DNA of 63,998 nt, the filler included, from Octopus bimaculoides (taxonomy: Eukaryota), in NCBI RefSeq assembly GCF_001194135.2. It is 5 parts of 5 records of this genome, joined end to end, with 100 filler letters (N's around TTAATTAATTAA, not from the genome) between each part and the next. Parts side by side here need not be neighbours in the genome. Positions count along the whole stretch, not along the records: positions 23,331 to 52,570 come from NC_068982.1; 4 more parts are not named here. The stretch is one strand, 5' to 3'. Shown here in pieces: positions 26,447-50,529 of this stretch (the stretch's first letter is position 1; every line of letters starts with the position of its first letter). Made by a program: the position numbers and the translations under genes. The notes below the pieces were generated by a model, which worked only from the letters and a program-made list of their open reading frames with translations, was not told where the DNA came from and did no database searches.

Positions 26447-26830
26447 TCTCTTTTACCTGTTTCAGTCATTTGACTGCGGCCATGCTGGAGCACTACCTTT
26501 AGTCAAGCAAATTGACCCCAGGACTTATTCTTTGTAAGCCTAGTACTTATTCTATCGGTCTCTTTTGTCAAACCGCTAAGTTACGGTGACGTAAACACAC
26601 CAGCATCAGTTGTCAAGCGATGTTGGGGGGACAAACACAGAAACACACACACACATATATATATACATATATACAACGGGCTTCTTTCAGTTTCCGTCTA
26701 CCAAATCCACTCACAAGGCTTTGGTCGGCCCGAGGCTATAGTAGAAGGTATTTGCCCAAGGTGCCACGCAGTGGGACTGAACCCGGAACCATGTGGTTGG
26801 TATGCAAGCTACTTACCACTCAGCCACTCC
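26447..26830 (-). mobile_element. SINE family B (CORE-like), near full length
   Basis: Colinear with 21555-21930. Confidence 0.9.
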
Positions 26831-26974
26831 TGTCATTTTTTAATCTAATAAACCAAAACACAAAGCTATGGGGGTAAATGCACATTAGCATGTAAGAATT
26901 AAGTTTGGTGATAACAAAATATGAATACGAAATCTCTGTTCATTGTGGTCATTCATTCTGATTGTCTTATTTGA

Positions 26975-27489: not shown

Positions 27490-27805
27490 CAGCGTCACCT
27501 TACTGGCACGTGAAAAAACATTTGAGTGAGGTCGTTGCTAGTACCACTGGACTGGCTCCTGTGCAGGTGACATGTAAAATACACCATTTTCAGTGTGGCC
27601 GTTGCCAGTACCGCCTGACTGGCCCTCATGCCGGTGGCACGTAAAAAGCACCCACTACACTCTCAGAGTGGTTGGCGTTAGGAAGGGCATCCAGCTGTAG
27701 AAACTGCCAGATCAGATTGAAGCCTGGTGTAGCCTTCTGGTTCGCCAGTCCTCAGTCAAATTGTCCAACTCATGCTAGCATGGAAAGCGGACGTTAAACG
27801 AACAA
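27490..27805 (+). mobile_element. SINE family C (RTE-like tail)
   Basis: ggttggcgttaggaagggcatccagctgtagaaac...atgctagcatggaaagcggacgttaaacg; other copies at 44395-44720, 46135-46460, 47820-48040 and 48490-48900. Confidence 0.85.
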
Positions 27806-29046
27806 TCAAGATACACCTTGGCAAAGTTATCAATATTTGTGCCTTTGAGCCTGTGGAATGAATTCTCTACAGATTTAACAGAAATATCGGGGGTCATAAC
27901 AGCAGGTCCTTCTTTTTGATGTTGTATCCATAACAAGATCACAGTGGTTCAGTTCCTACCTGAAAAGAAGAGATAGGATTTTAAAGCAACATATTCAAAA
28001 TTAGTATGACAATCCAAAATTCCTGCAAATAGTGGTGTAAAGTTAACTTTTGGTATACTTCTGGTAAGTAAAAGCATATACCAATGGCACAAAAATGTGA
28101 TGTGATAAAGCAAATGTGAGGTCAGTTTTGGAATCATCCTGCCAAAATTAAGTCTAATACAACTCAAAGATTTTATGCCAGGAAATGAAAGTTGTATTTT
28201 GTTGACGAGTGTAATGAGATAAATTCAAAGTGGGCAGATGAAAGTTAAAGGAAAAAAAAAGAAGAGGTAATCATTGATTATAGCGTCGTCAATTAGAATG
28301 AAACCAACAGTAACGAGATATATGCAGAAATAAATAATCTGGCTATCCTGGATGATCGAAACGAATAAACAAATGTTTAACAACATGTGAGACAGAAAAA
28401 CCTTATTTCTCATGGCTATTGATGTGACTCTAATAAACTCAAACAGGCAGCGATGGTGTCTTTATGTAGTTTAATGTTTTATCGTGTTTTTCCCCCTTTT
28501 GTTATTATCAAAGTTTGCACTGATGTATTCTGTACGTTTCTGCTTGAAACGTTTATCAAGATCGGTGAAATTGATGGGTTGTTTTTGCTCAGGTAAATGT
28601 TGTCATTTCTCGGCAACATATTTTAATTAATTTATTAAGCGTGCATTACTGTTCTTATGGGTTAATTTTAATTAGCTCCAATTATATACGAAACAGATGC
28701 AACAATGGATCTTGTTAAATTTCAAGTATTTTCTCTAGATAATTTTTTTAATGCAGTTTTGCAATCTGGAGACGAAATGTGCATTCTAGAAATTAACAAT
28801 AAAGAAGTTATACAATGTCGAAATTTTGAAAAAAAATCTGGTAAAAATTTGAGATACTTAAATGGTTGGAAGAAATTTAACAAGATCCATAATAATGAGT
28901 GAAGGTTAAAGAAAGAGAGAGAGAGAAGGAATAAGACAGGCGAGACATGGAGAAAGAAAGCGATCAATGAATAACTACAGCGAGTGAAAGAGAGGAAGAG
29001 AGGAAGTTGTCACCTCGACTCTCGCAACAAATATTGAAATAGAATT

Positions 29047-29479
29047 ATGTCGGGTCACTCGAACGATTGTGTACAGCCTGTTATTTTCTTATCGCATGGA
29101 GGTGGGCCTTCATTCTTCATGGATATCAAGGAATATCCAGGTATGCGTGGAATGGATCGGGACTCGGAGGCAGCAAAATTCCTGCAAAATCTGACACGAA
29201 CTCACCTGAATAAACGGCCAAAGGCGATCCTAGTTGTCAGCGCCCACTGGGAAGAAAATGTCCCAAGCGCCATGGACGACCAAGATCATTCCTTGTTCTT
29301 TGATTATTACGGATTTCCTAAGAGCATGTATGAACTGAAATGGCCTGCAAAAGGAGCTGCCCGTGTCTCCGAATTATTCAAGACACGCGGTATATCATGC
29401 CGGCAGGCGCATGGTCGTGGGTTAGACCATGGCGTTTTTGTGCCCTTCATCTTAGTCTGGCCAGAAGCCGATATCCCAA
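29047..29479 (+). CDS. DODA: LigB/4,5-DOPA extradiol dioxygenase-like protein, exon 1 of 2 (281 aa in total)
   Basis: Family motifs FLSHGGGP (H17), VVSAHWE (H67), DYYGFP, RGLDHGVFVP, PEADIP; phase-1 donor CCAA|GTAAGT. Confidence 0.93.
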
Positions 29480-29624
29480 GTAAGTTAACCCTCAAATTTT
29501 ATTTAATTATTGTTGCTTTCGTCCTACTACAAACTGCCATCATAGACATTAACCCCAAGCTTACAGGTGGTCCTTGTTGGTTTATCGTTGAAATAGACGG
29601 AACGTTTAGAAATAGCAGCCAAAC

Positions 29625-29808
29625 TTATTTCTGGATTTCCTAAGAGCATACCTGCAGGAGGAGCACCAGGTGCGGCTGTCCGTATCTCCAAATTATTCAA
29701 AACCCACGGTACACCATGCGGGCAGGTACGTGGTCGATGGTTAGCTCATGGGGGATGTTGGTAACCTTCAATTGGAGTCTGGTCGGAGGTCGACATTCCG
29801 AGTAAATT
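29625..29808 (+). pseudogene. Decayed tandem copy of the 3' part of DODA exon 1, including its donor site
   Basis: Aligns to 29305-29485: GFPKS..PAGGAPGAAVRISKLFKTHG..CGQVRGRWLAHG../VWSEVDIP then a|gtaaat; carries a 15-nt deletion and a frameshift. Confidence 0.85.
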
Positions 29809-30039
29809 GATCGGAAGTGACGACAGGTACCATCTCTTGGGCTACGTGTAAACAAATCTTTATTACATAACCAACGAAGAGAGCCGTCATGGGCAAACTG
29901 CGGCCCACGGGACGGTACTGAATATTTTTAGTAGTGAGGCCCGACTGATGATAAGCCATATCTTAGCGGGCCGCTTCTCGAAAATTATGGCTCATGCCTA
30001 TACAAATATTTTATATAAGATGAAAACAATCATATGTAT

Positions 30040-31439
30040 GGGGGTGTTAATGCAGTTTTGCACCTCTCATTGAAAAATGCATTAAAATAATTTTTTTTTC
30101 GGATTCCTACGTTTAAGATGTCGGAGATTACGAATAGGTAAAAAAAAAAAAAAAATTTTTAACCCCCTAAAATTTTGGACTTTATCGAAATTTTTTTCTC
30201 GTTATGTTTTTAGATGACGGATATTCCGAAAATGCAAGAGACCACGTTTTCAAAATTTTAATTCAATAAGAATATAGATATGTGTATATAAAGAGATGCG
30301 TATAAAGATATAGGCACAGGCGTGGCTGTGTGGTCAGAAGTCTTNNNNNNNNNNNNNNNNNNNNNNNNNNNNNNNNNNNNNNNNNNNNNNNNNNNNNNNN
30401 NNNNNNNNNNNNNNNNNNNNNNNNNNNNNNNNNNNNNNNNNNNNNNNNNNNNNNNNNNNNNNNNNNNNNNNNNNNNNNNNNNNNNNNNNNNNNNNNNNNN
30501 NNNNNNNNNNNNNNNNNNNNNNNNNNNNNNNNNNNNNNNNNNNNNNNNNNNNNNNNNNNNNNNNNNNNNNNNNNNNNNNNNNNNNNNNNNNNNNNNNNNN
30601 NNNNNNNNNNNNNNNNNNNNNNNNNNNNNNNNNNNNNNNNNNNNNNNNNNNNNNNNNNNNNNNNNNNNNNNNNNNNNNNNNNNNNNNNNNNNNNNNNNNN
30701 NNNNNNNNNNNNNNNNNNNNNNNNNNNNNNNNNNNNNNNNNNNNNNNNNNNNNNNNNNNNNNNNNNNNNNNNNNNNNNNNNNNNNNNNNNNNNNNNNNNN
30801 NNNNNNNNNNNNNNNNNNNNNNNNNNNNNNNNNNNNNNNNNNNNNNNNNNNNNNNNNNNNNNNNNNNNNNNNNNNNNNNNNNNNNNNNNNNNNNNNNNNN
30901 NNNNNNNNNNNNNNNNNNNNNNNNNNNNNNNNNNNNNNNNNNNNNNNNNNNNNNNNNNNNNNNNNNNNNNNNNNNNNNNNNNNNNNNNNNNNNNNNNNNN
31001 NNNNNNNNNNNNNNNNNNNNNNNNNNNNNNNNNNNNNNNNNNNNNNNNNNNNNNNNNNNNNNNNNNNNNNNNNNNNNNNNNNNNNNNNNNNNNNNNNNNN
31101 NNNNNNNNNNNNNNNNNNNNNNNNNNNNNNNNNNNNNNNNNNTGTATCTAATTTACATTAAACTCTTATTGACACAAGTAAAACGCAAATTCTCTTCACT
31201 TAAATGTTTTTGTCTGGATTTAATTTCGATCTGCCAATGTTTGTCAATTTGCTACGATCTCTTTAAAGTAAACAAAATTAAAAATTTAAATGGGGGTGCG
31301 AGGGGGAGGTGGCGAAAATAAAAAAAACATTTTTTTTTTGCATATTCGTAATCTCCGACATCCAAAACGTAAGAATCCGAAAGAAAATTTTCCAAAAACT
31401 GCATTTTTCAAGGAGAGGTGCGAAACTGCATTAGGCCCC
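30040..31439. mobile_element. Non-autonomous DNA transposon with about 110-bp imperfect TIRs, in the DODA intron
   Basis: Left ggggg..taatgcagttttgcacctctcattgaaaaatgca...gatgtcggagattacgaata matches the reverse complement of about 31350-31439; a family B SINE head enters the central gap at about 30315. Confidence 0.75.
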
Positions 31440-31816
31440 ATTTATGTTAGGTATGGTAAGGTTGGAACGGTGTACCTCTCGGCTGTTATTTCTGAAGTAT
31501 TTAAGAAATAACACAGGTACCCTAGTAGGTACCTGTGGACACAGTATACTGAGGGAATTCTGTGAAAGTTAAATTATTTCACCAGTAGCTTGCTTACCAA
31601 CCACATGGTTCCGGGCTCAGTCCCACTGTGTGGAACCTTGAATGAGCTTTGTTTCCTAATAACTTTCTGAACAAAGGGTATTATTTAATGAAATTGTCTA
31701 TAAATACCTTTCAGATGGTGTAGATTACAATTATGTCAGAATTGAATATGAAAAAAATTGCTAGGCTCGCACACATGCATACCGACACACATCACAAAAT
31801 GAAACTTAAAATTAGC

Positions 31817-32171
31817 AGTTGTATGCTGTCAACTTAATGTGACAGTCCCCTGAAGGGAATAATACTACTGTTGGTTAGACCTAGGAAGCTGCACCGCTTC
31901 CCGTCGGCCTTGACACATTTCCTGTGTCCTTATGTTCACAAGGGGGAGACAAGCACTTCCACCCAGCTAAGCCTGCATCCAGAGACATGTTTCTGAGTCT
32001 TTGCTCTGGATGCAGGCTTAGCTGGGTGGAGGTGCTAGTCTCCCCCTTGTAAACATAAGGACACAGGAAATATGTCAAGGCCGACAGGAAGCGGTGTAGC
32101 TTCCTAGGTCTAACCAACAGTAGTATTATTCCCTTCAGGGGACTGTCACATTAAGTTGACAGCATACAACT
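31817..32171. repeat. Near-perfect fold-back: 168-bp arms, 19-nt loop
   Basis: 31817-31984 is the reverse complement of 32004-32171, with 6 mismatches counted by eye. Confidence 0.97.
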
Positions 32172-32284
32172 ACTTCATCGTATCACTACTGCATAAATTT
32201 CTCTCAGAGATTTAGAAATGTATTATTTCTAAAGATTAAAATTAGCTTTCCTAATTTTTAATATTTTATTGTAATTCATTTCAG

Positions 32285-32697
32285 CATTTCAAGTGTCTCT
32301 GAAGAATACTTTGGACATGAAAGAACACCAAGAAATTGGTGAGGCATTATCAGAACTACGCAAAGACGGAATACTTATTGTTGGATCTGGTTTTATGACT
32401 CACTCTAGCGAAAAAGCGAAAACTGTTGATGGTGTATTTGAATGGGCAACCGAATTTAAAGTTTGGGAGCGCAATGTATTTTGTAACCCCAAATTATCAC
32501 CATCAGAAAGGAAAAAACAAATGCTTGAGTGTGAATCTCTTGGATTTTTTCACAAAGCCCATCCCCGTATCGAACATTTCCTGCCATTGGTTGTGGCGTC
32601 TGCAGCAGCTGGTTACGTCTGTGGAGAGGCAATATTTTCTCAGTTTGTATCCCCAAGTTTATTGTTGGAACATGTCCTGTTTAAATCTGACCCTTAA
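32285..32697 (+). CDS. DODA: LigB/4,5-DOPA extradiol dioxygenase-like protein, exon 2 of 2
   Basis: Acceptor ttcag|CA restores the frame (DIP-T-FQVSL); motifs LIVGSGFMTH (H184) and AHPRIEHFLPL (H242); stop TAA; 433+413=846 nt. Confidence 0.92.
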
Positions 32698-32714: not shown

Positions 32715-32900
32715 TTGAGGAAGGTTTTGCACGCCGACCTTACAAAACCCCTCACTGCCCAAACAGACCCATCGGTTGGAGGGGTGTCACCTGAACGGTG
32801 CAAAAAGTCTCGTCTGCCAAGAATAGAGCATCACCAACAAATGGTGGATGCAGTAATGTACTATTACTTCACCTCCCTCCCCACCACTCATACTACTACT
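32715..32900. repeat. Dispersed repeat immediately after the DODA stop codon
   Basis: ccaaacagacccat.ggttgga...gtgcaaa...catcaccaacaaatggtggat.cagt recurs at about 40685-40870. Confidence 0.7.
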
Positions 32901-34689
32901 ACTACTGCTGCTGCTGCTTAACGAAAGATCATGTAACACACACACACACTTGAAGGGTTTAATTAAGCAAGCCAAACCCTAGTACTTATTCTATTGGTCT
33001 CTTTTGCCAATAAGTTACAGGGACATAAACAAACCAACACTGGTTGTCAAGCAATGGTGGGGTACAAACACACAATGTTTCTGTCTGCCAAATTTACTCC
33101 CAAGGCCATTGGTTGGTTTGAGGTTACTCAGTGGAAGACTTCTGATCAAAGTGCTGTACAGCGAGATTGAATGCAAAACTCCAGGGTTGCAAAGTCAGGN
33201 NNNNNNNNNNNNNNNNNNNNNNNNNNNNNNNNNNNNNNNNNNNNNNNNNNNNNNNNNNNNNNNNNNNNNNNNNNNNNNNNNNNNNNNNNNNNNNNNNNNN
33301 NNNNNNNNNNNNNNNNNNNNNNNNNNNNNNNNNNNNNNNNNNNNNNNNNNNNNNNNNNNNNNNNNNNNNNNNNNNNNNNNNNNNNNNNNNNNNNNNNNNN
33401 NNNNNNNNNNNNNNNNNNNNNNNNNNNNNNNNNNNNNNNNNNNNNNNNNNNNNNNNNNNNNNNNNNNNNNNNNNNNNNNNNNNNNNNNNNNNNNNNNNNN
33501 NNNNNNNNNNNNNNNNNNNNNNNNNNNNNNNNNNNNNNNNNNNNNNNNNNNNNNNNNNNNNNNNNNNNNNNNNNNNNNNNNNNNNNNNNNNNNNNNNNNN
33601 NNNNNNNNNNNNNNNNNNNNNNNNNNNNNNNNNNNNNNNNNNNNNNNNNNNNNNNNNNNNNNNNNNNNNNNNNNNNNNNNNNNNNNNNNNNNNNNNNNNN
33701 NNNNNNNNNNNNNNNNNNNNNNNNNNNNNNNNNNNNNNNNNNNNNNNNNNNNNNNNNNNNNNNNNNNNNNNNNNNNNNNNNNNNNNNNNNNNNNNNNNNN
33801 NNNNNNNNNNNNNNNNNNNNNNNNNNNNNNNNNNNNNNNNNNNNNNNNNNNNNNNNNNNNNNNNNNNNNNNNNNNNNNNNNNNNNNNNNNNNNNNNNNNN
33901 NNNNNNNNNNNNNNNNNNNNNNNNNNNNNNNNNNNNNNNNNNNNNNNNNNNNNNNNNNNNNNNNNNNNNNNNNNNNNNNNNNNNNNNNNNNNNNNNNNNN
34001 NNNNNNNNNNNCCCCCCCACGAGAGGATGAAAGGCAAAGTTGACCTTGGCAGAATTTGAACTCAGAATGTAAAGACAGACAAAATACCACTAAAATCAAA
34101 GACTCATGTTCCAAGGAAAATAATTTTTATTCTATTCATTAAAAAATACATTCATATATATATATATACATATGTGTGAGTGTGTATGTATACATACATA
34201 CACATACAATATTTCAAGATATATTTATTGTATCTATAACATATAAAAATACTACATCATAAAAAAAAAGAACAATATACTTTTAATATTTACATATTTG
34301 CTTTGCCTTTTTTCTTTTTTTTTCCATATTTTTGTTTTTTTTCAAGCTAATAGAGTTGGGTTTAACTTTACTCAAAGTATAAGCTTCTATCTGAGATCTT
34401 GTTTATAAAGAATCTGTATTGTAGCCCTTGTAGTTGAAAAGAGAATCTCGAGAAATAACACCATCACTAAGACCCACTGTCCTAAAATCTTATTTCTTAG
34501 AAAAAATGATATGATTTTTTTTCATAAATATATTTTTCAAAATACAATAAAATAGTGTCTGGATTACAGATTAAACATCATTCCTAAAATAGAGTTAGAA
34601 TCCATTTGTTTTGTTTTGTTTCAATTCTGTTCCTAGTTTTGTATTTTCATTCTTTTCTGTCACATGGTACGTTTAGTGTTTTTTTTTAA

Positions 34690-42425: not shown

Positions 42426-42836
42426 TCATGAATTAACAGATATTTCAAATGGGATATAGAAAGAGTTGTCTGTAGAATTAATTATAGCAGTTGATGGTTT
42501 TTCAATAGTGTTTGTGAAATTAGAGGCATTATTCGATGTTGTAGGCACTGGATTGTAAACAGATTCAGAACATGGACTCACTAATTGGGAATCCCCTAAT
42601 TCAGGCATTAATTGTTCTTTAACAGATTCTGTGTGTTTTAGAGTGTAATATTTCTTGTATGGTTTAGTTCTAACTTTCAGAAATTCTTCCTTTGATAAAA
42701 CGTGAATACCTGCAGCAGTAAGCAACTTGCCATGTCTTGTTTTCAAATGTCTTTTATATGTGTTACGTGTTTTGAATTTTTGTGGGCAGTCTTTGCATTC
42801 AAACGGAGTTTCTCCTGTGTGTCGTCGCAAATGCTC
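42426..42836 (-). CDS. C2H2 zinc-finger protein, last exon (end of finger 3, finger 4, C-terminal tail)
   Basis: Acceptor ctttag|GAG; EHLRRHTGETPFECKDCPQKFKTRNTYKRHLKTRH; phase 0 matches the upstream exon. Confidence 0.92.
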   Translation of the reverse strand, partial: EHLRRHTGETPFECKDCPQKFKTRNTYKRHLKTRHGKLLTAAGIHVLSKEEFLKVRTKPYKKYYTLKHTESVKEQLMPELGDSQLVSPCSESVYNPVPTTSNNASNFTNTIEKPSTAIINSTDNSFYIPFEISVNS

Positions 42837-44394: not shown

Positions 44395-44720
44395 CATCAT
44401 CATCATCCTCGTCGTTTAACGTCCGCTTTCCATACTAGCATGGGTTAGACAGTTTGACTGAGGACTGGCAAGCCAGATGGCTACACCAGGCTCCAATCTG
44501 ATCTGGCAGAGTTTCTACAGCTGGATGCCCTTCCTAACACCAACCACTCAGAGAGTGTAGTGGGTGCTTTTACGTGCCACCGGCACGAAGACCAGTCAGG
44601 CGGTACTGGCAATGGCCACACTTGAAACGGTGTCTTTTACGTGCCACCTGCACAGGAGCCAGTCCAGCGGCACTGGCAACGATCTCGCTCGAATGTCTTT
44701 ACACGTGCCACTGGCACAAC
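44395..44720 (-). mobile_element. SINE family C
   Basis: catcatcatc..gtttaacgtccgctttccatactagcatggg...gctggatgcccttcctaacaccaacc. Confidence 0.85.
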
Positions 44721-45720: not shown

Positions 45721-46134
45721 TGATAATAATCCTTTCTACAATAGATACAAGGCCTGAAATTTTGAGGGGAAGGAGCTCGTTGATGACTGATCCCAAAAGG
45801 ATGAAAGACAAAGTTAATCTCAGCAGAAATTGAAATCAGAAGTGATGTGGGCATTTGCCTTTTCTGCCCAGCCTTTCTGAGGCTGCAGTCATTCAACCAA
45901 TTTCTGGACAGGACTAGCCACCCTGTTTCTCGCCTCATCCTAGGTCCAGTCTACATGTATTTGTTGCAAGTGAACCAGACCGTGAGTGGTTTATCTGGTC
46001 CATCAATCCAACATCCTATAACATTATTGAACAACACTGACCAGCCTCTTCATGTGTCCAGTTGCAAGCCCATCAAGTTGTCTGCATTGATCTTGACTCC
46101 TGCCACCATCTCATATTGCTTTAGAATAGTGTCA

Positions 46135-46460
46135 GTGCCGATGGCACGTAAAAAGCATCATCCAAACATGGCTGATGCCAGTACCACCTGACTGGCCCCA
46201 GGGCCAGTGGCACATAAAAAGCACTATCCGAATGTGATCGATGCCAGTACCGCCGGACTGGCTCTCATACCGGTGGCACATAAAAAGCATCCACTACACT
46301 CTCGGAGTGGTTGGCATTAGGAAGGGCATCCAGCTGTAGAAACCTTGCCAGATCAGATTGGAGCCTGGTGCAGCTGCTGGCTCTCCAGACCTAAGTCAAA
46401 CCATCCAACCCATGCCAGCATGGAAAACGGACGTTAAACGACGACGATGATGATGATGCC
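46135..46460 (+). mobile_element. SINE family C with internal tandem sub-repeats and (GAT)n tail
   Basis: Three ggcac(g/a)taaaaagca units, then ggaagggcatccagctgtagaaac...ggacgttaaacgacgacgatgatg. Confidence 0.85.
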
Positions 46461-47028
46461 CACTTCTGTGATGTCCAACACAATGAAAATTATGTTGTTG
46501 GCACATGCCAACATGTCTCTCCTGGTCCCAGTTTAAAATGGAAGCCCCTCACACTTCCAGCCATAACAGGGCACTATATCAGATTAAAATACATGAAAAT
46601 ACACATAAAGTTATCTAAATATTAATTTTTATCATTGACATAAAGTTCAACAGAGGGAGAGAGGTAGCTATATTGGTTTACCTGTCTCCAATATTTAACT
46701 GTTACTTATTTTATCAACACCTCTCACCCCAGGGGGTGGATGCAAGACAAACTCAGCATTAGTGGGATTTGAACTCACAACATACAGGAATGTAACTATC
46801 AGCTGTACATTTTGCCAAGAGCCCTACTGAGTTCACTACCTACTGGTTTTATCTCAATATCACTCCTGAAATATACCGAAAGAGACTAGATAATGCCATT
46901 TCTCATCTCTACTTTTATTATTATTACTTCAAGAAACACCATCATCATCATCATTTAATGTCCATTTTCCGTGCTGGCATGGGTTGGACAGTTTGACAGA
47001 AAATGGCAAACTGGGGAGCATGGTTTCT

Positions 47029-47246
47029 TATTTCTTTATTGCCCACAAGGGGCTAAACATAGAGGGGACAAACAAGGACAGACAAAGGGATTAAGTCGAT
47101 GACATCAACCCCAGTGTTTCACTGGTACTTAATTTACCGACCCCGAAAGAATGAAAGGCAAAGTCGACCTCGGCAGAATTTGAACTCAGAACGTAACAAC
47201 AGACAAAATACCGCTAAGCATTTCGCCCGGCGTGCTAACATTTGTG
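47029..47246 (-). mobile_element. SINE family A nested in a family C SINE, with 11-bp TSD
   Basis: TSD gcatggtttct at 47018-47028 and 47247-47257; the host element resumes after the insert. Confidence 0.88.
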
Positions 47247-47316
47247 GCATGGTTTCTATGGCTCACTGCCCTTCGTAACGTCAAAATTTTACAAATCAAA
47301 TTCTACAAACACTTAC

Positions 47317-47525: not shown

Positions 47526-49069
47526 CTGGCATAGAGATCTAAATACACACTCACACATATACCCAGGTACATAGCACATATACTGTACACAGTTAAATAT
47601 ACTTACATCAATTATAGGATACACCTAAACGAAGCATGTTCCACTCTTGACATACGTCCACATACACAAATTCACACAAGCCCCCCACACACACACATCT
47701 GTATGTGTGTATAGTATACATGCATAAATATAGGGACATCCATGTACCTACTCTACAGGAAGATACTTATACCTTAAATCTCTCTAATCCCAGCTCAGGG
47801 GTTTTTGACATGCAAGGTACCAGGGAAGCCCTGTTGATGCTAGTGCCACATAAAAAGCACTGATGAAGGGGCCAAGTAAAAAGCACCCAGTACACTCTGC
47901 AAAGTGATTGACAATAGGGAGGGCATCCAGCTGTAGAAACCATGCCAAAACAGACAACAGAACCTGGCATCGCTCCTGACCTTCCCAGCTCCCGTGAAAC
48001 CATCCAACCCATGCCAGCCTGGAAAACAGATGTTAAATCATAGTGTTCTTGATAATGACATCATCACTGATTTTAAAGTACCAACACAAGGTAAACCTTT
48101 CCCTCTTTCCTGCGTCCTTACAGTGACTGACTTTTTAAAATCTCTGCTAAACATTCTACCAATCTTTCCTTCATGGAAAGTACAAATACCTGGCACTCGT
48201 TCTCTATCCATGCATTCCATATGTGCATCACCCTACAGAAATTCTAGGCTGATGTCAACTGCATCAACTTCTGGTATATAAGTAGGCCCCAAAAAAGTTA
48301 TGGACAAACATGTGCTTTGGGGTTGACTCTCACTGTGAGGACATGGTCAATTAGTGTCCTATTTATAGCCATGGGTTAACCAATTTCTTGTGAATGGTAG
48401 ACAAGTACCAACACTTCCATGTGACATGCTTGGACCCATCAAGCAGAGTATGCTTGAGAAGAAGATCCATCAAGCCAAGCAAAATTGCAGTTGTGGCAGA
48501 TACTGGTGTCATGCAAATGGCACTCGTGCTGGTGGCATGTAAAAGCACCCATTACACTCTCAGAATGGTTGGTGTTGGGAACGGCATCTAGCCGTAGAAA
48601 GCCATGCCAAGTGAGACTGGAGTCTGGTGCAGCCTTCCTGCTTACCAGTCCCAGCCAAACAGTCCAATCCATGCCAGCATGGACAATGGACATATGATGA
48701 TGATGATGAATATTACTATCATCATTTGACATCCGTTTTCCACGCTGGCCTGGTTTGGATGGGTTGACAGGAGCTGGCAAGCCATAGCGATATACCAGGT
48801 TCCTTGGTTTGTTTTGATGAGGTTTCTGCAGCTGAATGCCATTCCTAACTTCAACCACTTTACAGAGTATTATGGGTGCTTTTTATGTGGCACCAAATTA
48901 TATTTATAATGTATTACAGAAATAAATGCTTAAAATCTATATTTTCTCATTTTTCTCCACATTTTCACAGAAATTTAAAAAGCCAAATATTTATTTGATT
49001 TTCTTTTTTAGTACAAATATCACAAAATTAAATCTCTGAGCGAGAAGCAAGCAGTAGCAGCACGGAACC

Positions 49070-49374: not shown

Positions 49375-49720
49375 TCAAGCATGGCTGTGTGGTTAAGAAT
49401 CTCACTTTGCAACCATATGGCTTTGGGTTCCATCCCACTGCATGGCACTTTGGGCAAGTGTCTTCTATTATGGCCCCAGGCCAACCAATGCTTTATAAAG
49501 AACACTATGGAAACCCATCATATGTATGCGTGTGTCTTTGTCCCCACACACCCCTTGGTGATTGGTGTTGGTTTGTTTATATCCCCCATAACTTAGCAGT
49601 TCAGCAAGAGGCCAATTGAAAATAAATGCCGGACTTTAAAAATATTTACTGGTGTTGTTTGTTTAAGTTAGTGCCCCAGCATGACCACAGTTCAACGACT
49701 GAAACAGATAGTCGATAAAA
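49375..49720 (+). mobile_element. SINE family B
   Basis: catggctgtgtggttaagaa...tggcactttgggcaagtgtcttctatta...gactgaaacagata. Confidence 0.82.
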
Positions 49721-49755
49721 GATACAAAGAAAAAGATAACAAAAAAAACACATAC

Positions 49756-50529
49756 TATGTCCACAATGACCCAAAGAGTCATCGTCTTCGGTCAGCAATG
49801 AACTGTCCACAATCTCTTCAGAGGCCACGGTAGGTATATCTTCACTGCAAAAATCTAATTCCAATATTGGCAATAATGGTCTGCTATCAAATGTAGAACT
49901 GTCATCGACATCTGCTGAGTGATTGCTAGAATTGTCCTCTTCCTGATCTGAATATACAGAACATGTTTCAACAAGACATTTCTTACCGGATACCGTCGTG
50001 TAACAATGATCATGATGTGGGTGAGTATTCCTTAACAAATCTAAAATAAATTCTTCATTATTTCCGTCAATCTTCTTGACAATGTCTTTCTTAGAAGCAC
50101 AGTTTCCTTCCTCCTTTTTAGCCGTTTCGTCTGCAACTTGTGTGCTTACAAATTTTAAATCATCTTCATTCACCAAAAGAACAGATTTGGAAGAAACCTT
50201 TTTGGTTTTACATTTAGGGGATTTTTTAAGTTTGGTTTCTTTGTTAAGGTTATGCTGTGCCATAACTTTTTTTGGAGAACTAACATTTTTTACAGTCTCG
50301 TTTGATTGTTTTATCTCTCTCTCAGACAAATTATTTTTTCTTGTCGACCTCACTGGTCCATTCATATCAACAGTATTTCTCTTCGGTGTTGGCATCTTAT
50401 TTTCTCGACTAACTTCTTTGGTTGCTTTTAGATTAGTGAAAGTTTTAATAGTCTTGTTGCAGTTGATGTTGCTCCCGTTTAAAGGATTACAATTCACATA
50501 GTTCGATCTCTTCTTTTTAGCTTTTTCTT
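49756..50529 (-). CDS. C2H2 zinc-finger protein, large low-complexity exon (basic, then acidic) with DHCY motif
   Basis: tcaacag|AA GAA AAA GCT...CAT A|gtatgt; 774-nt open frame; HPHHDHCYTT at about 49994-50023. Confidence 0.85.

What the first reader, a model, noticed from the sequence alone, without database searches (positions are those of the whole stretch)
29047..32697. Intact 4,5-DOPA-dioxygenase (LigB/DODA)-type gene in an apparent cephalopod genome
Seen: a clean two-exon 281-aa ORF with the three predicted metal-binding His (H17, H67, H242) and the active-site-region H184. Established: this class III extradiol family includes E. coli YgiD and the plant DODAs that cleave L-DOPA to betalamic acid; it is best known from bacteria, fungi and plants. 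After H184 the protein reads SSEKAKT, which matches neither the H-N-L-R/G of non-betalain plant enzymes nor the H-P-(S/A)-(N/D)-x-T-P of betalain-forming ones. Inference: in an animal rich in DOPA/catechol chemistry (ink melanin, catechol pigments), this could be an uncharacterised ring-cleavage branch for pigment or detoxification, and an ancient horizontal transfer or patchily retained gene.
Basis: partly seen in the sequence, partly recalled or inferred. Interest (0 to 1): 0.72.

Follow-up and report, generated by a model that had tools for sequence, protein, structure and literature searches.

The report
Octopus DODA-type catechol ring-cleaving dioxygenase gene
The window holds a real, intact, selectively constrained two-exon octopus gene for a DOPA-dioxygenase-like iron enzyme; it is already annotated, is shared by snails, bivalves and cephalopods, and has an untested substrate.

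Summary
Exon 1 (29047-29479) and exon 2 (32285-32697) join through a GT-AG phase-1 intron into a 281-aa LigB-family protein. It is identical to Octopus bimaculoides LOC106874817.

The assembly gap lies wholly inside the intron and hides no coding sequence. Homologues align without a gap across the exon junction, and the gap-free O. vulgaris orthologue has the same two exons.

All five histidines shown to matter in beet DODA are present and invariant: three Fe ligands plus two catalytic residues. The AlphaFold model (pLDDT 93) superposes on plant DODA crystal structures. dN/dS against O. vulgaris is 0.16, so the gene is under purifying selection.

The gene is not a cephalopod oddity or a recent transfer. 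Orthologues occur in gastropods, bivalves and cuttlefish. The intron position and phase are shared by Octopus, Pinctada and Littorina.

In a neighbour-joining tree the mollusc clade sits among microbial-eukaryote sequences, apart from the named bacteria. That tree has no support values.

Substrate and product remain unknown. The loop after H184 varies widely among molluscs, and the beet L-DOPA-positioning residues are not conserved.

Verdict: an ordinary but uncharacterised member of a known enzyme family, of moderate interest.

The parts
29047..29479 (+). Exon 1 (433 nt; Met1 to the first base of codon 145). It encodes Fe ligands H17 and H67 and catalytic H128.
   Evidence: ATG at 29047, GTAAGT donor at 29480; in-frame TGA 12 nt upstream; tblastn 100% to P0001.
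29480..32284 (+). Phase-1 intron (2805 nt as assembled), GT...AG.
   Evidence: The position and phase are the same in O. vulgaris, Pinctada and Littorina.
30345..31142 (.). Assembly gap (798 N), entirely intronic.
   Evidence: The O. vulgaris intron is gap-free and has no extra exon. Both flanks are collinear with O. vulgaris.
32285..32697 (+). Exon 2 (413 nt including the TAA stop). It encodes catalytic H184, invariant H237 and Fe ligand H242.
29625..29808 (+). Pseudo-exon: a degenerate tandem copy of the 3' part of exon 1 (29304-29486) including a decayed donor (GTAAAT). It carries an in-frame stop and frame-breaking indels.
   Evidence: nucleotide alignment; tblastn 29633-29803, 50-56% identity, with a stop. 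The surrounding region aligns to O. vulgaris, so the copy is probably older than the species split. The copy itself was not located in O. vulgaris.
30048..30149 (.). Left arms of the inverted repeats that flank the assembly gap. The partner arms are at 31330-31433.
   Evidence: I2: 61 nt, 89% complementary; I3: 34 nt, 94%. This is a likely reason for the assembly break.
31330..31433 (.). Right arms of the inverted repeats that flank the assembly gap.
   Evidence: 31332-31433 matches O. vulgaris 11800-11699 in reverse.
31814..32174 (.). Near-perfect palindrome (171-nt arms, 96% complementary, 19-nt spacer). It lies within an intronic insertion of about 427 nt that O. vulgaris lacks.
   Evidence: The insertion is flanked by the direct repeat TTAAAATTAGC. 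It ends about 50 nt upstream of the exon 2 acceptor.

Best explanation
This is a functional nuclear gene of Octopus bimaculoides. It encodes a soluble, single-subunit, Fe(II)-dependent class III (LigB-superfamily, DODA/YgiD-type) extradiol dioxygenase.

Shown here:
- The two-exon structure.
- The 3-His metal site (H17, H67, H242) and the two catalytic histidines (H128, H184).
- A DODA fold in a confident predicted model.
- Purifying selection.
- Vertical inheritance at least since the common ancestor of cephalopods, gastropods and bivalves, through a shared intron.

Inferred from the beet enzyme mechanism (PMC11926856): a catechol chelates the Fe(II) through its two hydroxyls. H128 deprotonates and positions it, O2 binds the iron, and H184 acts as acid/base. 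The ring then opens next to the diol to give a seco-product.

If the substrate is L-DOPA, that product would cyclise spontaneously to betalamic acid and/or muscaflavin. I think L-DOPA or a related DOPA or dopamine-type catechol is the most likely substrate class (about 0.35-0.4 for L-DOPA itself). The pocket residues differ from the plant enzyme, so the physiological substrate and role (catechol clearance, antioxidant or pigment) are unknown.
For: - Gene model and residues.
- Pfam LigB 3e-25.
- Best solved relatives are plant 4,5-DOPA dioxygenases 8in2, 29ky and 9j2l, and E. coli YgiD 2pw6.
- H17, H67, H128, H184, H237 and H242 are invariant in 63 homologues. They map to BvDOD H15/H53/H229 (Fe ligands) and H119/H175 (activity lost on mutation), per PMC11926856.
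- AF2 model pLDDT 93.4, pTM 0.92.
- Foldseek TM 0.83-0.89 to 9j2l and 8in2, and 0.74-0.84 to 2pw6.
- Identical to RefSeq LOC106874817 on a 192-Mb chromosome.
- O. vulgaris orthologue is syntenic with the same structure.
- dN/dS 0.16 (dN 0.039, dS 0.25). CDS identity is 92.4% against 82-88% in the intron and flanks.
- Shared phase-1 intron in Pinctada and Littorina.
- Mollusca NJ bootstrap 95.5%, Cephalopoda 100%.
- The cuttlefish homologue is found intronless on contigs of about 1.3 kb from more than 50 sequencing-run assemblies, so it is transcribed and spliced.
- No signal peptide or membrane segment.
Against: - No transcript of this exact gene was found. The collection holds P0001 only on the genome contig.
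- O. bimaculoides lacks 12 nt (4 aa, APAV after G103) that O. vulgaris and all other homologues keep. This shortens the start of a helix, where the model's pLDDT is about 85.
- The score against the NCBIfam YgiD equivalog is 103 bits against a cut-off of 233.
- Beet residues T17, D254 and Y260, which position L-DOPA, align to G19/G20, V266 and L272. The C-terminal part of that alignment is weak.
- The loop after H184 varies widely among molluscs.
- No enzyme assay exists for any mollusc member. No paper in the searched library discusses one.
Confidence: 0.85

Rival explanations
1. The gene entered the stem lineage of Mollusca (or of a wider lophotrochozoan group) by an ancient horizontal transfer from a bacterium or a microbial eukaryote. 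It then acquired its intron.
For: - In two searches, no named animal outside Mollusca appears among the best 120 hits.
- After molluscs and one unnamed clade, the hits are bacteria and protists at 38-48% identity.
- The literature treats the other animal LigB/DODA genes as transfers: tardigrade DODA1 (PMC13389832) and Lepidoptera LigB (PMC5704228).
Against: - In the NJ tree of 50%-identity representatives, the mollusc clade nests among sequences that include every named microbial eukaryote (Chromulina, EukProt, MMETSP, Phytophthora). It lies apart from the named bacteria. That fits old eukaryotic ancestry with loss equally well.
- Its sister clade of six unnamed, intronless, transcript-sized contigs (98% bootstrap with Mollusca) could be other animals.
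- CDS GC (44%) is only modestly above intron GC (39%), so composition gives no clear sign of foreign origin.
- The trees are neighbour-joining only.
Confidence: 0.3
2. The ORF is a decaying or neutral relic (pseudogene in the making) in octopus. A second paralogue carries the function.
For: - There is a species-specific 4-aa deletion in a conserved segment.
- Octopus has a second paralogue, P0011, which groups with the cuttlefish gene at 97% bootstrap.
- No assembled transcript of P0001 was found.
- A pseudo-exon and insertions lie in the intron.
Against: - dN/dS is 0.16 over dS 0.25.
- Both species keep an intact ORF and intact splice sites.
- All invariant family residues are kept.
- The structure model is confident.
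Confidence: 0.07
3. The sequence is bacterial or other contamination, or a misassembly joined across the N gap.
For: An assembly gap sits inside the gene span, and the family is mostly bacterial.
Against: - The gene has a spliceosomal GT-AG intron.
- The locus lies inside a 192-Mb chromosome between octopus repeats, with a C2H2 zinc-finger gene nearby.
- It is collinear over more than 15 kb with an independent O. vulgaris assembly.
- Local GC is 36-42%, like the surroundings.
- No sigma-70 promoter-like or intrinsic terminator-like sites lie downstream of the stop.
Confidence: 0.01

Closest known systems
Plant 4,5-DOPA extradiol dioxygenases (Beta vulgaris BvDOD 8IN2, Mirabilis jalapa 9J2L, 29KY)
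   Same: - Same fold (TM 0.83-0.89) and similar length.
- 28-34% identity in the structural alignments.
- Same 3-His Fe site and the same two catalytic histidines.
   Different: - The motif after the catalytic His is H-S-S-E-K-A-K-T rather than H-P-(S/L)-(N/D)-x-T-P.
- Beet L-DOPA-positioning residues T17, D254 and Y260 are G, V and L here.
- Activity is untested.
E. coli YgiD (2PW6; NCBIfam NF007914, 4,5-DOPA-extradiol-dioxygenase)
   Same: Same DODA-type subfamily with three His ligands. Foldseek TM 0.74-0.84.
   Different: Only about 25% identity. The score of 103 bits is below the equivalog cut-off of 233. Bacterial members carry Y/F-H-N-L-R after the catalytic His.
Mollusc '4,5-DOPA dioxygenase extradiol-like' proteins (Haliotis, Pomacea, Gigantopelta, Mizuhopecten, Crassostrea, Pinctada and others) and the cuttlefish homologue
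   Same: These are orthologues or close paralogues at 44-63% identity and form one clade. The phase-1 intron after the ...DIP codon is shared.
   Different: The octopus copy P0001/P0002 sits on a long branch, sister to cuttlefish plus the octopus paralogue P0011. O. bimaculoides has a private 4-aa deletion. Littorina has two extra introns.
Tardigrade DODA1 (Hypsibius henanensis; Li et al. 2024, as cited in PMC13263728 and PMC13389832)
   Same: It is an animal DODA-family gene. It is reported to make betalains and to be radiation-induced, and it is the only animal enzyme of this family said to be functionally described.
   Different: It is described as a horizontal transfer. No named tardigrade protein appears among the best 120 hits of either mollusc-clade query. 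I did not compare the sequences directly.
LigAB protocatechuate 4,5-dioxygenase (1BOU/1B4U) and other class III extradiol enzymes (aminophenol dioxygenase, DesB, DHPAO)
   Same: Same superfamily and core fold (TM 0.6-0.67). The H128/H184 equivalents are H127/H195 in LigB.
   Different: Those enzymes use a 2-His-1-Glu metal site and often a second subunit, at 12-17% identity. The octopus protein has His at the third ligand position.

Membership tests
LigB superfamily (class III extradiol dioxygenases, Pfam PF02900) | Significant match to the LigB domain over most of its length | tested here: met
   89.3 bits against a cut-off of 26.3; residues 13-255 match profile positions 3-246 of 269.
LigB superfamily (class III extradiol dioxygenases, Pfam PF02900) | Characteristic fold | tested here: met
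   model pLDDT 93.4. All 37 Foldseek hits with E<=1e-3 are LigB-superfamily or MEMO-fold proteins.
DODA/YgiD-type subfamily | Three-histidine metal site (BvDOD H15, H53, H229) | tested here: met
   H17, H67 and H242 are invariant in 63 homologues. The H67 and H242 equivalents are seen directly in the alignments to 8in2. H17 is placed by eye on the FFISHGTP motif, because HMMER misaligned that N-terminal stretch. Roles are from PMC11926856.
DODA/YgiD-type subfamily | Two catalytic second-sphere histidines (BvDOD H119, H175) | tested here: met
   H128 (GLDHG) and H184 (GSGxxTH) are invariant.
DODA/YgiD-type subfamily | NCBIfam NF007914 equivalog score (same function as E. coli YgiD) | tested here: not met
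   102.6 bits against a cut-off of 233. It is a homologue, but not an equivalog of the bacterial enzyme.
DODA/YgiD-type subfamily | Fe(II)-dependent extradiol cleavage of L-DOPA to seco-DOPA, then betalamic acid or muscaflavin | not testable with these tools
   This needs recombinant enzyme and LC-MS.
Betalain-forming plant DODA (high-activity type) | H-P-(S/A)-(N/D)-x-T-P motif after the catalytic His.
   the octopus protein has H-S-S-E-K-A-K-T. The loop differs in every mollusc lineage examined.
Betalain-forming plant DODA (high-activity type) | L-DOPA-positioning residues T17, D254 and Y260 of BvDOD | tested here: inconclusive
   they align to G19/G20, V266 and L272. The C-terminal alignment has low posterior confidence, and no structural superposition at residue level was available.
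Mollusc DODA-like orthologue group | Clade membership and shared intron position and phase | tested here: met
   Mollusca 95.5% and Cephalopoda 100% NJ bootstrap; a phase-1 intron after ...(D/K)(I/V)P in Octopus, Pinctada and Littorina.

The most novel reading that the evidence does not exclude
Molluscs, octopus included, carry an old, intron-bearing, selectively maintained DOPA or catechol ring-cleaving enzyme that is active in vivo. It would yield betalamic-acid or muscaflavin-type (or other seco-catechol) products used as pigment, antioxidant or catechol sink. That would make Mollusca a second animal lineage with this chemistry, acquired or retained independently of the tardigrade DODA1 transfer.
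Probability: 0.25. Interest if true: 0.65.

Novelty: new member of a known kind. Interest (0 to 1): 0.38.

Why it matters
According to a 2026 paper (PMC13263728), the tardigrade DODA1 is the only animal DOPA-dioxygenase functionally described. That enzyme is reported to make betalains and to be induced by radiation.

A whole-phylum clade of intact, constrained homologues in molluscs has not been discussed in the searched literature. It is an easy target: one small soluble enzyme with a colour assay.

An active enzyme would add a DOPA-consuming branch beside melanin synthesis in animals rich in catechol chemistry. It would also bear on whether DODA-type enzymes in eukaryotes are ancestral or repeatedly transferred.

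If the enzyme acts on another catechol, the finding is simply a housekeeping aromatic-ring dioxygenase, and the gene is ordinary.

Tried and rejected
- Hidden exon or frame break in the N gap: rejected.
- Contamination or misassembly: rejected.
- Pseudogene: unlikely.
- Cephalopod-specific or recent transfer: rejected.
- Using the post-His motif to predict the product: abandoned, because the loop varies widely among molluscs.
- Gene-structure look-ups for Haliotis P0005 and Pomacea P0017 found no record. The O. vulgaris paralogue P0011 spans 138 kb, so no DNA was returned. Its odd C-terminus may be a mis-annotation.
- The organism behind the sister clade (P0021, P0025, P0027, P0030, P0031, P0035) could not be named. 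Only run or sample ids were returned: SRR23076784 and JGI 3300031114.
- Naming the next-nearest representatives gave only a few protist labels.
- The bacterial promoter and terminator scan downstream of the stop found nothing, and no AATAAA/ATTAAA lies before the next gap.
- Literature searches for mollusc or cephalopod DOPA dioxygenase found nothing relevant.
- I did not fetch tardigrade or lepidopteran sequences, so their relation to the mollusc clade rests only on their absence from the top hits.
Full report
**1. The observation**

- The ORF opens at ATG 29047, with an in-frame TGA 12 nt upstream. It runs to a GTAAGT donor after 29479.
- It resumes after a polypyrimidine-TTTCAG acceptor at 32285 and ends with TAA at 32695-32697.
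- The exons are 433 and 413 nt, so the intron is phase 1. The spliced product is 281 aa.
- Histidines sit at 17, 67, 128, 184, 237 and 242, and the motif after H184 is SSEKAKT.

**2. The assembly gap**

The N run 30345-31142 lies deep in the intron. Three independent lines show that it hides no coding sequence and that the two sides belong together.
- Alignments to plant DODA structures and to 62 homologues run without any gap through the junction (PEADIP|TFQVSL).
- The O. vulgaris orthologue lies in an assembly with no N in the gene. It has the same donor (GTAAGTTA) and a similar acceptor ending in TTTCAG, a 2697-nt intron and only two exons.
- Both gap flanks are collinear, in order and orientation, with the O. 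vulgaris intron.

The gap is bracketed by inverted-repeat arms at 30048-30149 and 31330-31433. This probably explains the assembly break.

**3. Where the window comes from**

The protein is 100% identical to Octopus bimaculoides LOC106874817, which NCBI labels 'uncharacterized protein' and UniRef 'Extradiol ring-cleavage dioxygenase...'. The gene span is base-for-base identical to GCA_001194135.2 chromosome CM046602.1 at about 186.86 Mb.

Several features mark it as octopus nuclear DNA rather than contamination.
- The surroundings are typical octopus DNA at 36-42% GC, with many interspersed repeats.
- A C2H2 zinc-finger gene lies on the other strand from about 42.4 kb.
- The locus is collinear with O. 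vulgaris over more than 15 kb.

**4. What the protein is**

Sequence and structure searches agree.
- Pfam LigB matches at 3e-25.
- The best solved relatives are the plant 4,5-DOPA dioxygenases 8IN2, 29KY and 9J2L (E 1e-33 to 1e-42; 1e-63 to 1e-74 with a profile). E. coli YgiD 2PW6 follows.
- The AlphaFold2 model built on 63 homologues is confident (pLDDT 93.4, pTM 0.92).
- It superposes on 9J2L and 8IN2 with TM 0.83-0.89 and on YgiD with TM 0.74-0.84. The 2-His-1-Glu enzymes (aminophenol dioxygenase, DesB, LigB) come far behind.

The beet enzyme paper (PMC11926856) shows that Fe is held by H15, H53 and H229, and that the H119A and H175A mutants lose activity. The octopus equivalents H17, H67, H242, H128 and H184 are invariant across all 63 aligned homologues.

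The protein has no signal peptide or membrane segment. It is therefore best read as a cytosolic, single-subunit, 3-His Fe(II) extradiol catechol dioxygenase.

**5. Is it alive?**

Against O. vulgaris (90% amino-acid identity), dN is 0.039, dS is 0.25 and dN/dS is 0.16. CDS nucleotide identity is 92.4%, against 82-88% for the intron and flanks. That is purifying selection.

Two caveats apply.
- O. bimaculoides has lost 12 nt (APAV after G103) between GCT repeats. This segment is present in O. vulgaris and every other homologue.
- I could find no assembled transcript of this exact protein.

The cuttlefish homologue (the P0003 cluster includes Acanthosepion pharaonis) is found intronless on contigs of about 1.3 kb from more than 50 sequencing-run assemblies. 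The cephalopod family is therefore transcribed and spliced.

**6. Distribution and age**

Named orthologues at 44-53% identity occur in these groups.
- Gastropods: Haliotis, Pomacea, Littorina, Batillaria, Gigantopelta.
- Bivalves: Solemya, Pinctada, Argopecten, Mizuhopecten, Ylistrum, Dreissena, Tegillarca, Mya, Mytilus, Saccostrea, Crassostrea.

NJ bootstrap support is as follows.

| Group | Support |
|---|---|
| Mollusca | 95.5% |
| Cephalopoda | 100% |
| Cuttlefish + second octopus paralogue P0011 | 97% |

This gene (P0001/P0002) therefore looks like one of two copies that were already present in the common ancestor of octopus and cuttlefish.

The octopus intron is at the same codon and phase in Pinctada (two exons...PDADIP|V) and in Littorina (four exons...PKPKVP|V). 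The gene, with this intron, thus predates the split of cephalopods, gastropods and bivalves. That removes the cephalopod-specific and recent-transfer readings.

**7. Beyond molluscs**

- The sister group (98% bootstrap) is a clade of six unnamed, intronless, transcript-sized contigs from sequencing-run assemblies and JGI samples. I could not identify the organisms.
- No named non-mollusc animal appears in the best 120 hits of two searches.
- A profile search of 1.84 billion representatives finds 7249 family clusters (E<=1e-3). After the mollusc and sister-clade representatives, the best scorers are mostly unnamed environmental sequences. The three that carry a name are microbial eukaryotes: P0181 (a EukProt transcript), P0252 (a EukProt entry) and P0253 (Chromulina nebulosa).
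- In an NJ tree the mollusc clade sits in the assemblage that holds all named microbial eukaryotes, apart from the named bacteria. That tree has no support values and is indicative only.

Ancient retention with wide loss in animals is thus at least as good as an ancient transfer. I cannot decide between them.

The literature treats the other animal cases as transfers: tardigrade DODA1 and Lepidoptera LigB. It states that the tardigrade enzyme is the only one functionally described from an animal. I found no paper on a mollusc member.

**8. Substrate**

- Bacteria and protists carry H-N-L after the catalytic His.
- The three plant structures carry H-P-(S/L)-(N/D)-x-T-P.
- Octopus carries H-S-S-E-K-A-K-T.

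However, this loop differs in nearly every mollusc lineage (HNGG, HKGG, HRMG, HGKN, HTFE...), so it predicts nothing.

The beet residues that position the amino-acid part of L-DOPA (T17, D254, Y260) align to G, V and L. The alignment is weak at the C-terminus. The beet paper itself notes that pocket residues are not conserved across the family.

Catechol ring cleavage is well supported. L-DOPA as the substrate, and any link to ink or pigment, is conjecture.

**9. Verdict**

This is a real, intact, constrained, already-annotated but biochemically uncharacterised DODA-type dioxygenase gene, inherited vertically within Mollusca. It is a new member of a known kind and of moderate interest, because animal members of this family are almost unstudied.

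Noticed in passing
window 29625-29808 (+), inside the intron: This is a degenerate tandem copy of the last ~180 nt of exon 1, including its donor site, and it carries a stop and indels. It keeps the 'GAPxxA' residues that the functional O. bimaculoides exon has lost. The surrounding region aligns to O. vulgaris, so the copy is probably older than the species split.
   Followed up: partly
window 29353-29358 region (codons 103/104 of exon 1): O. bimaculoides has an in-frame 12-nt deletion (APAV) between GCT direct repeats. O. vulgaris and all other homologues keep these residues. It could be a real species difference, a polymorphism or an assembly error.
   Followed up: partly
window 31814-32174: A near-perfect palindrome (171-nt arms, 96% complementary, 19-nt spacer) lies within a ~427-nt insertion that the O. 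vulgaris intron lacks. The insertion is flanked by the direct repeat TTAAAATTAGC and is single-copy within the piece. It ends about 50 nt upstream of the exon 2 acceptor.
   Followed up: partly
window 30048-30149 and 31330-31433: Inverted-repeat arms bracket the assembly gap. This suggests a foldback element or hairpin-prone sequence that broke the assembly.
   Followed up: partly
window 42426-42830 and 49646-50497 (- strand): These are exon-sized ORFs of a neighbouring gene annotated as a 586-aa product with weak C2H2 zinc-finger hits. The first ORF contains zinc-finger-like HxxxH/CxxC spacing.
   Followed up: no
window 26448-26831, 27504-27801, 44395-44719, 46132-46458, 47023-47249, 48518-48724: These interspersed repeats each match several places in the 23.5-kb O. 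vulgaris locus at 70-90% identity. They look like SINE-like or other high-copy octopus elements.
   Followed up: no
O. vulgaris paralogue P0011 (not in the window): Octopus has a second DODA-like gene that groups with the cuttlefish gene. Its annotated model spans 138 kb and ends in an unrelated C-terminus lacking the H237/H242 region. It is either mis-annotated or truncated. No O. bimaculoides counterpart appeared in the hits.
   Followed up: partly
L005 (SRR23076784 contig) and L010 (JGI 3300031114 contig): A well-supported sister clade of the mollusc proteins (GSGQSTHN motif, 61-67% identical among themselves) is known only from unnamed transcript-sized contigs. The source organisms are unidentified.
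   Followed up: partly
window 28905-28925, 32878-32915, 32936-32950: These are short microsatellites: (AG)n upstream of the gene, and (TAC)n(TGC)n and (CA)n just downstream of the stop.
   Followed up: no
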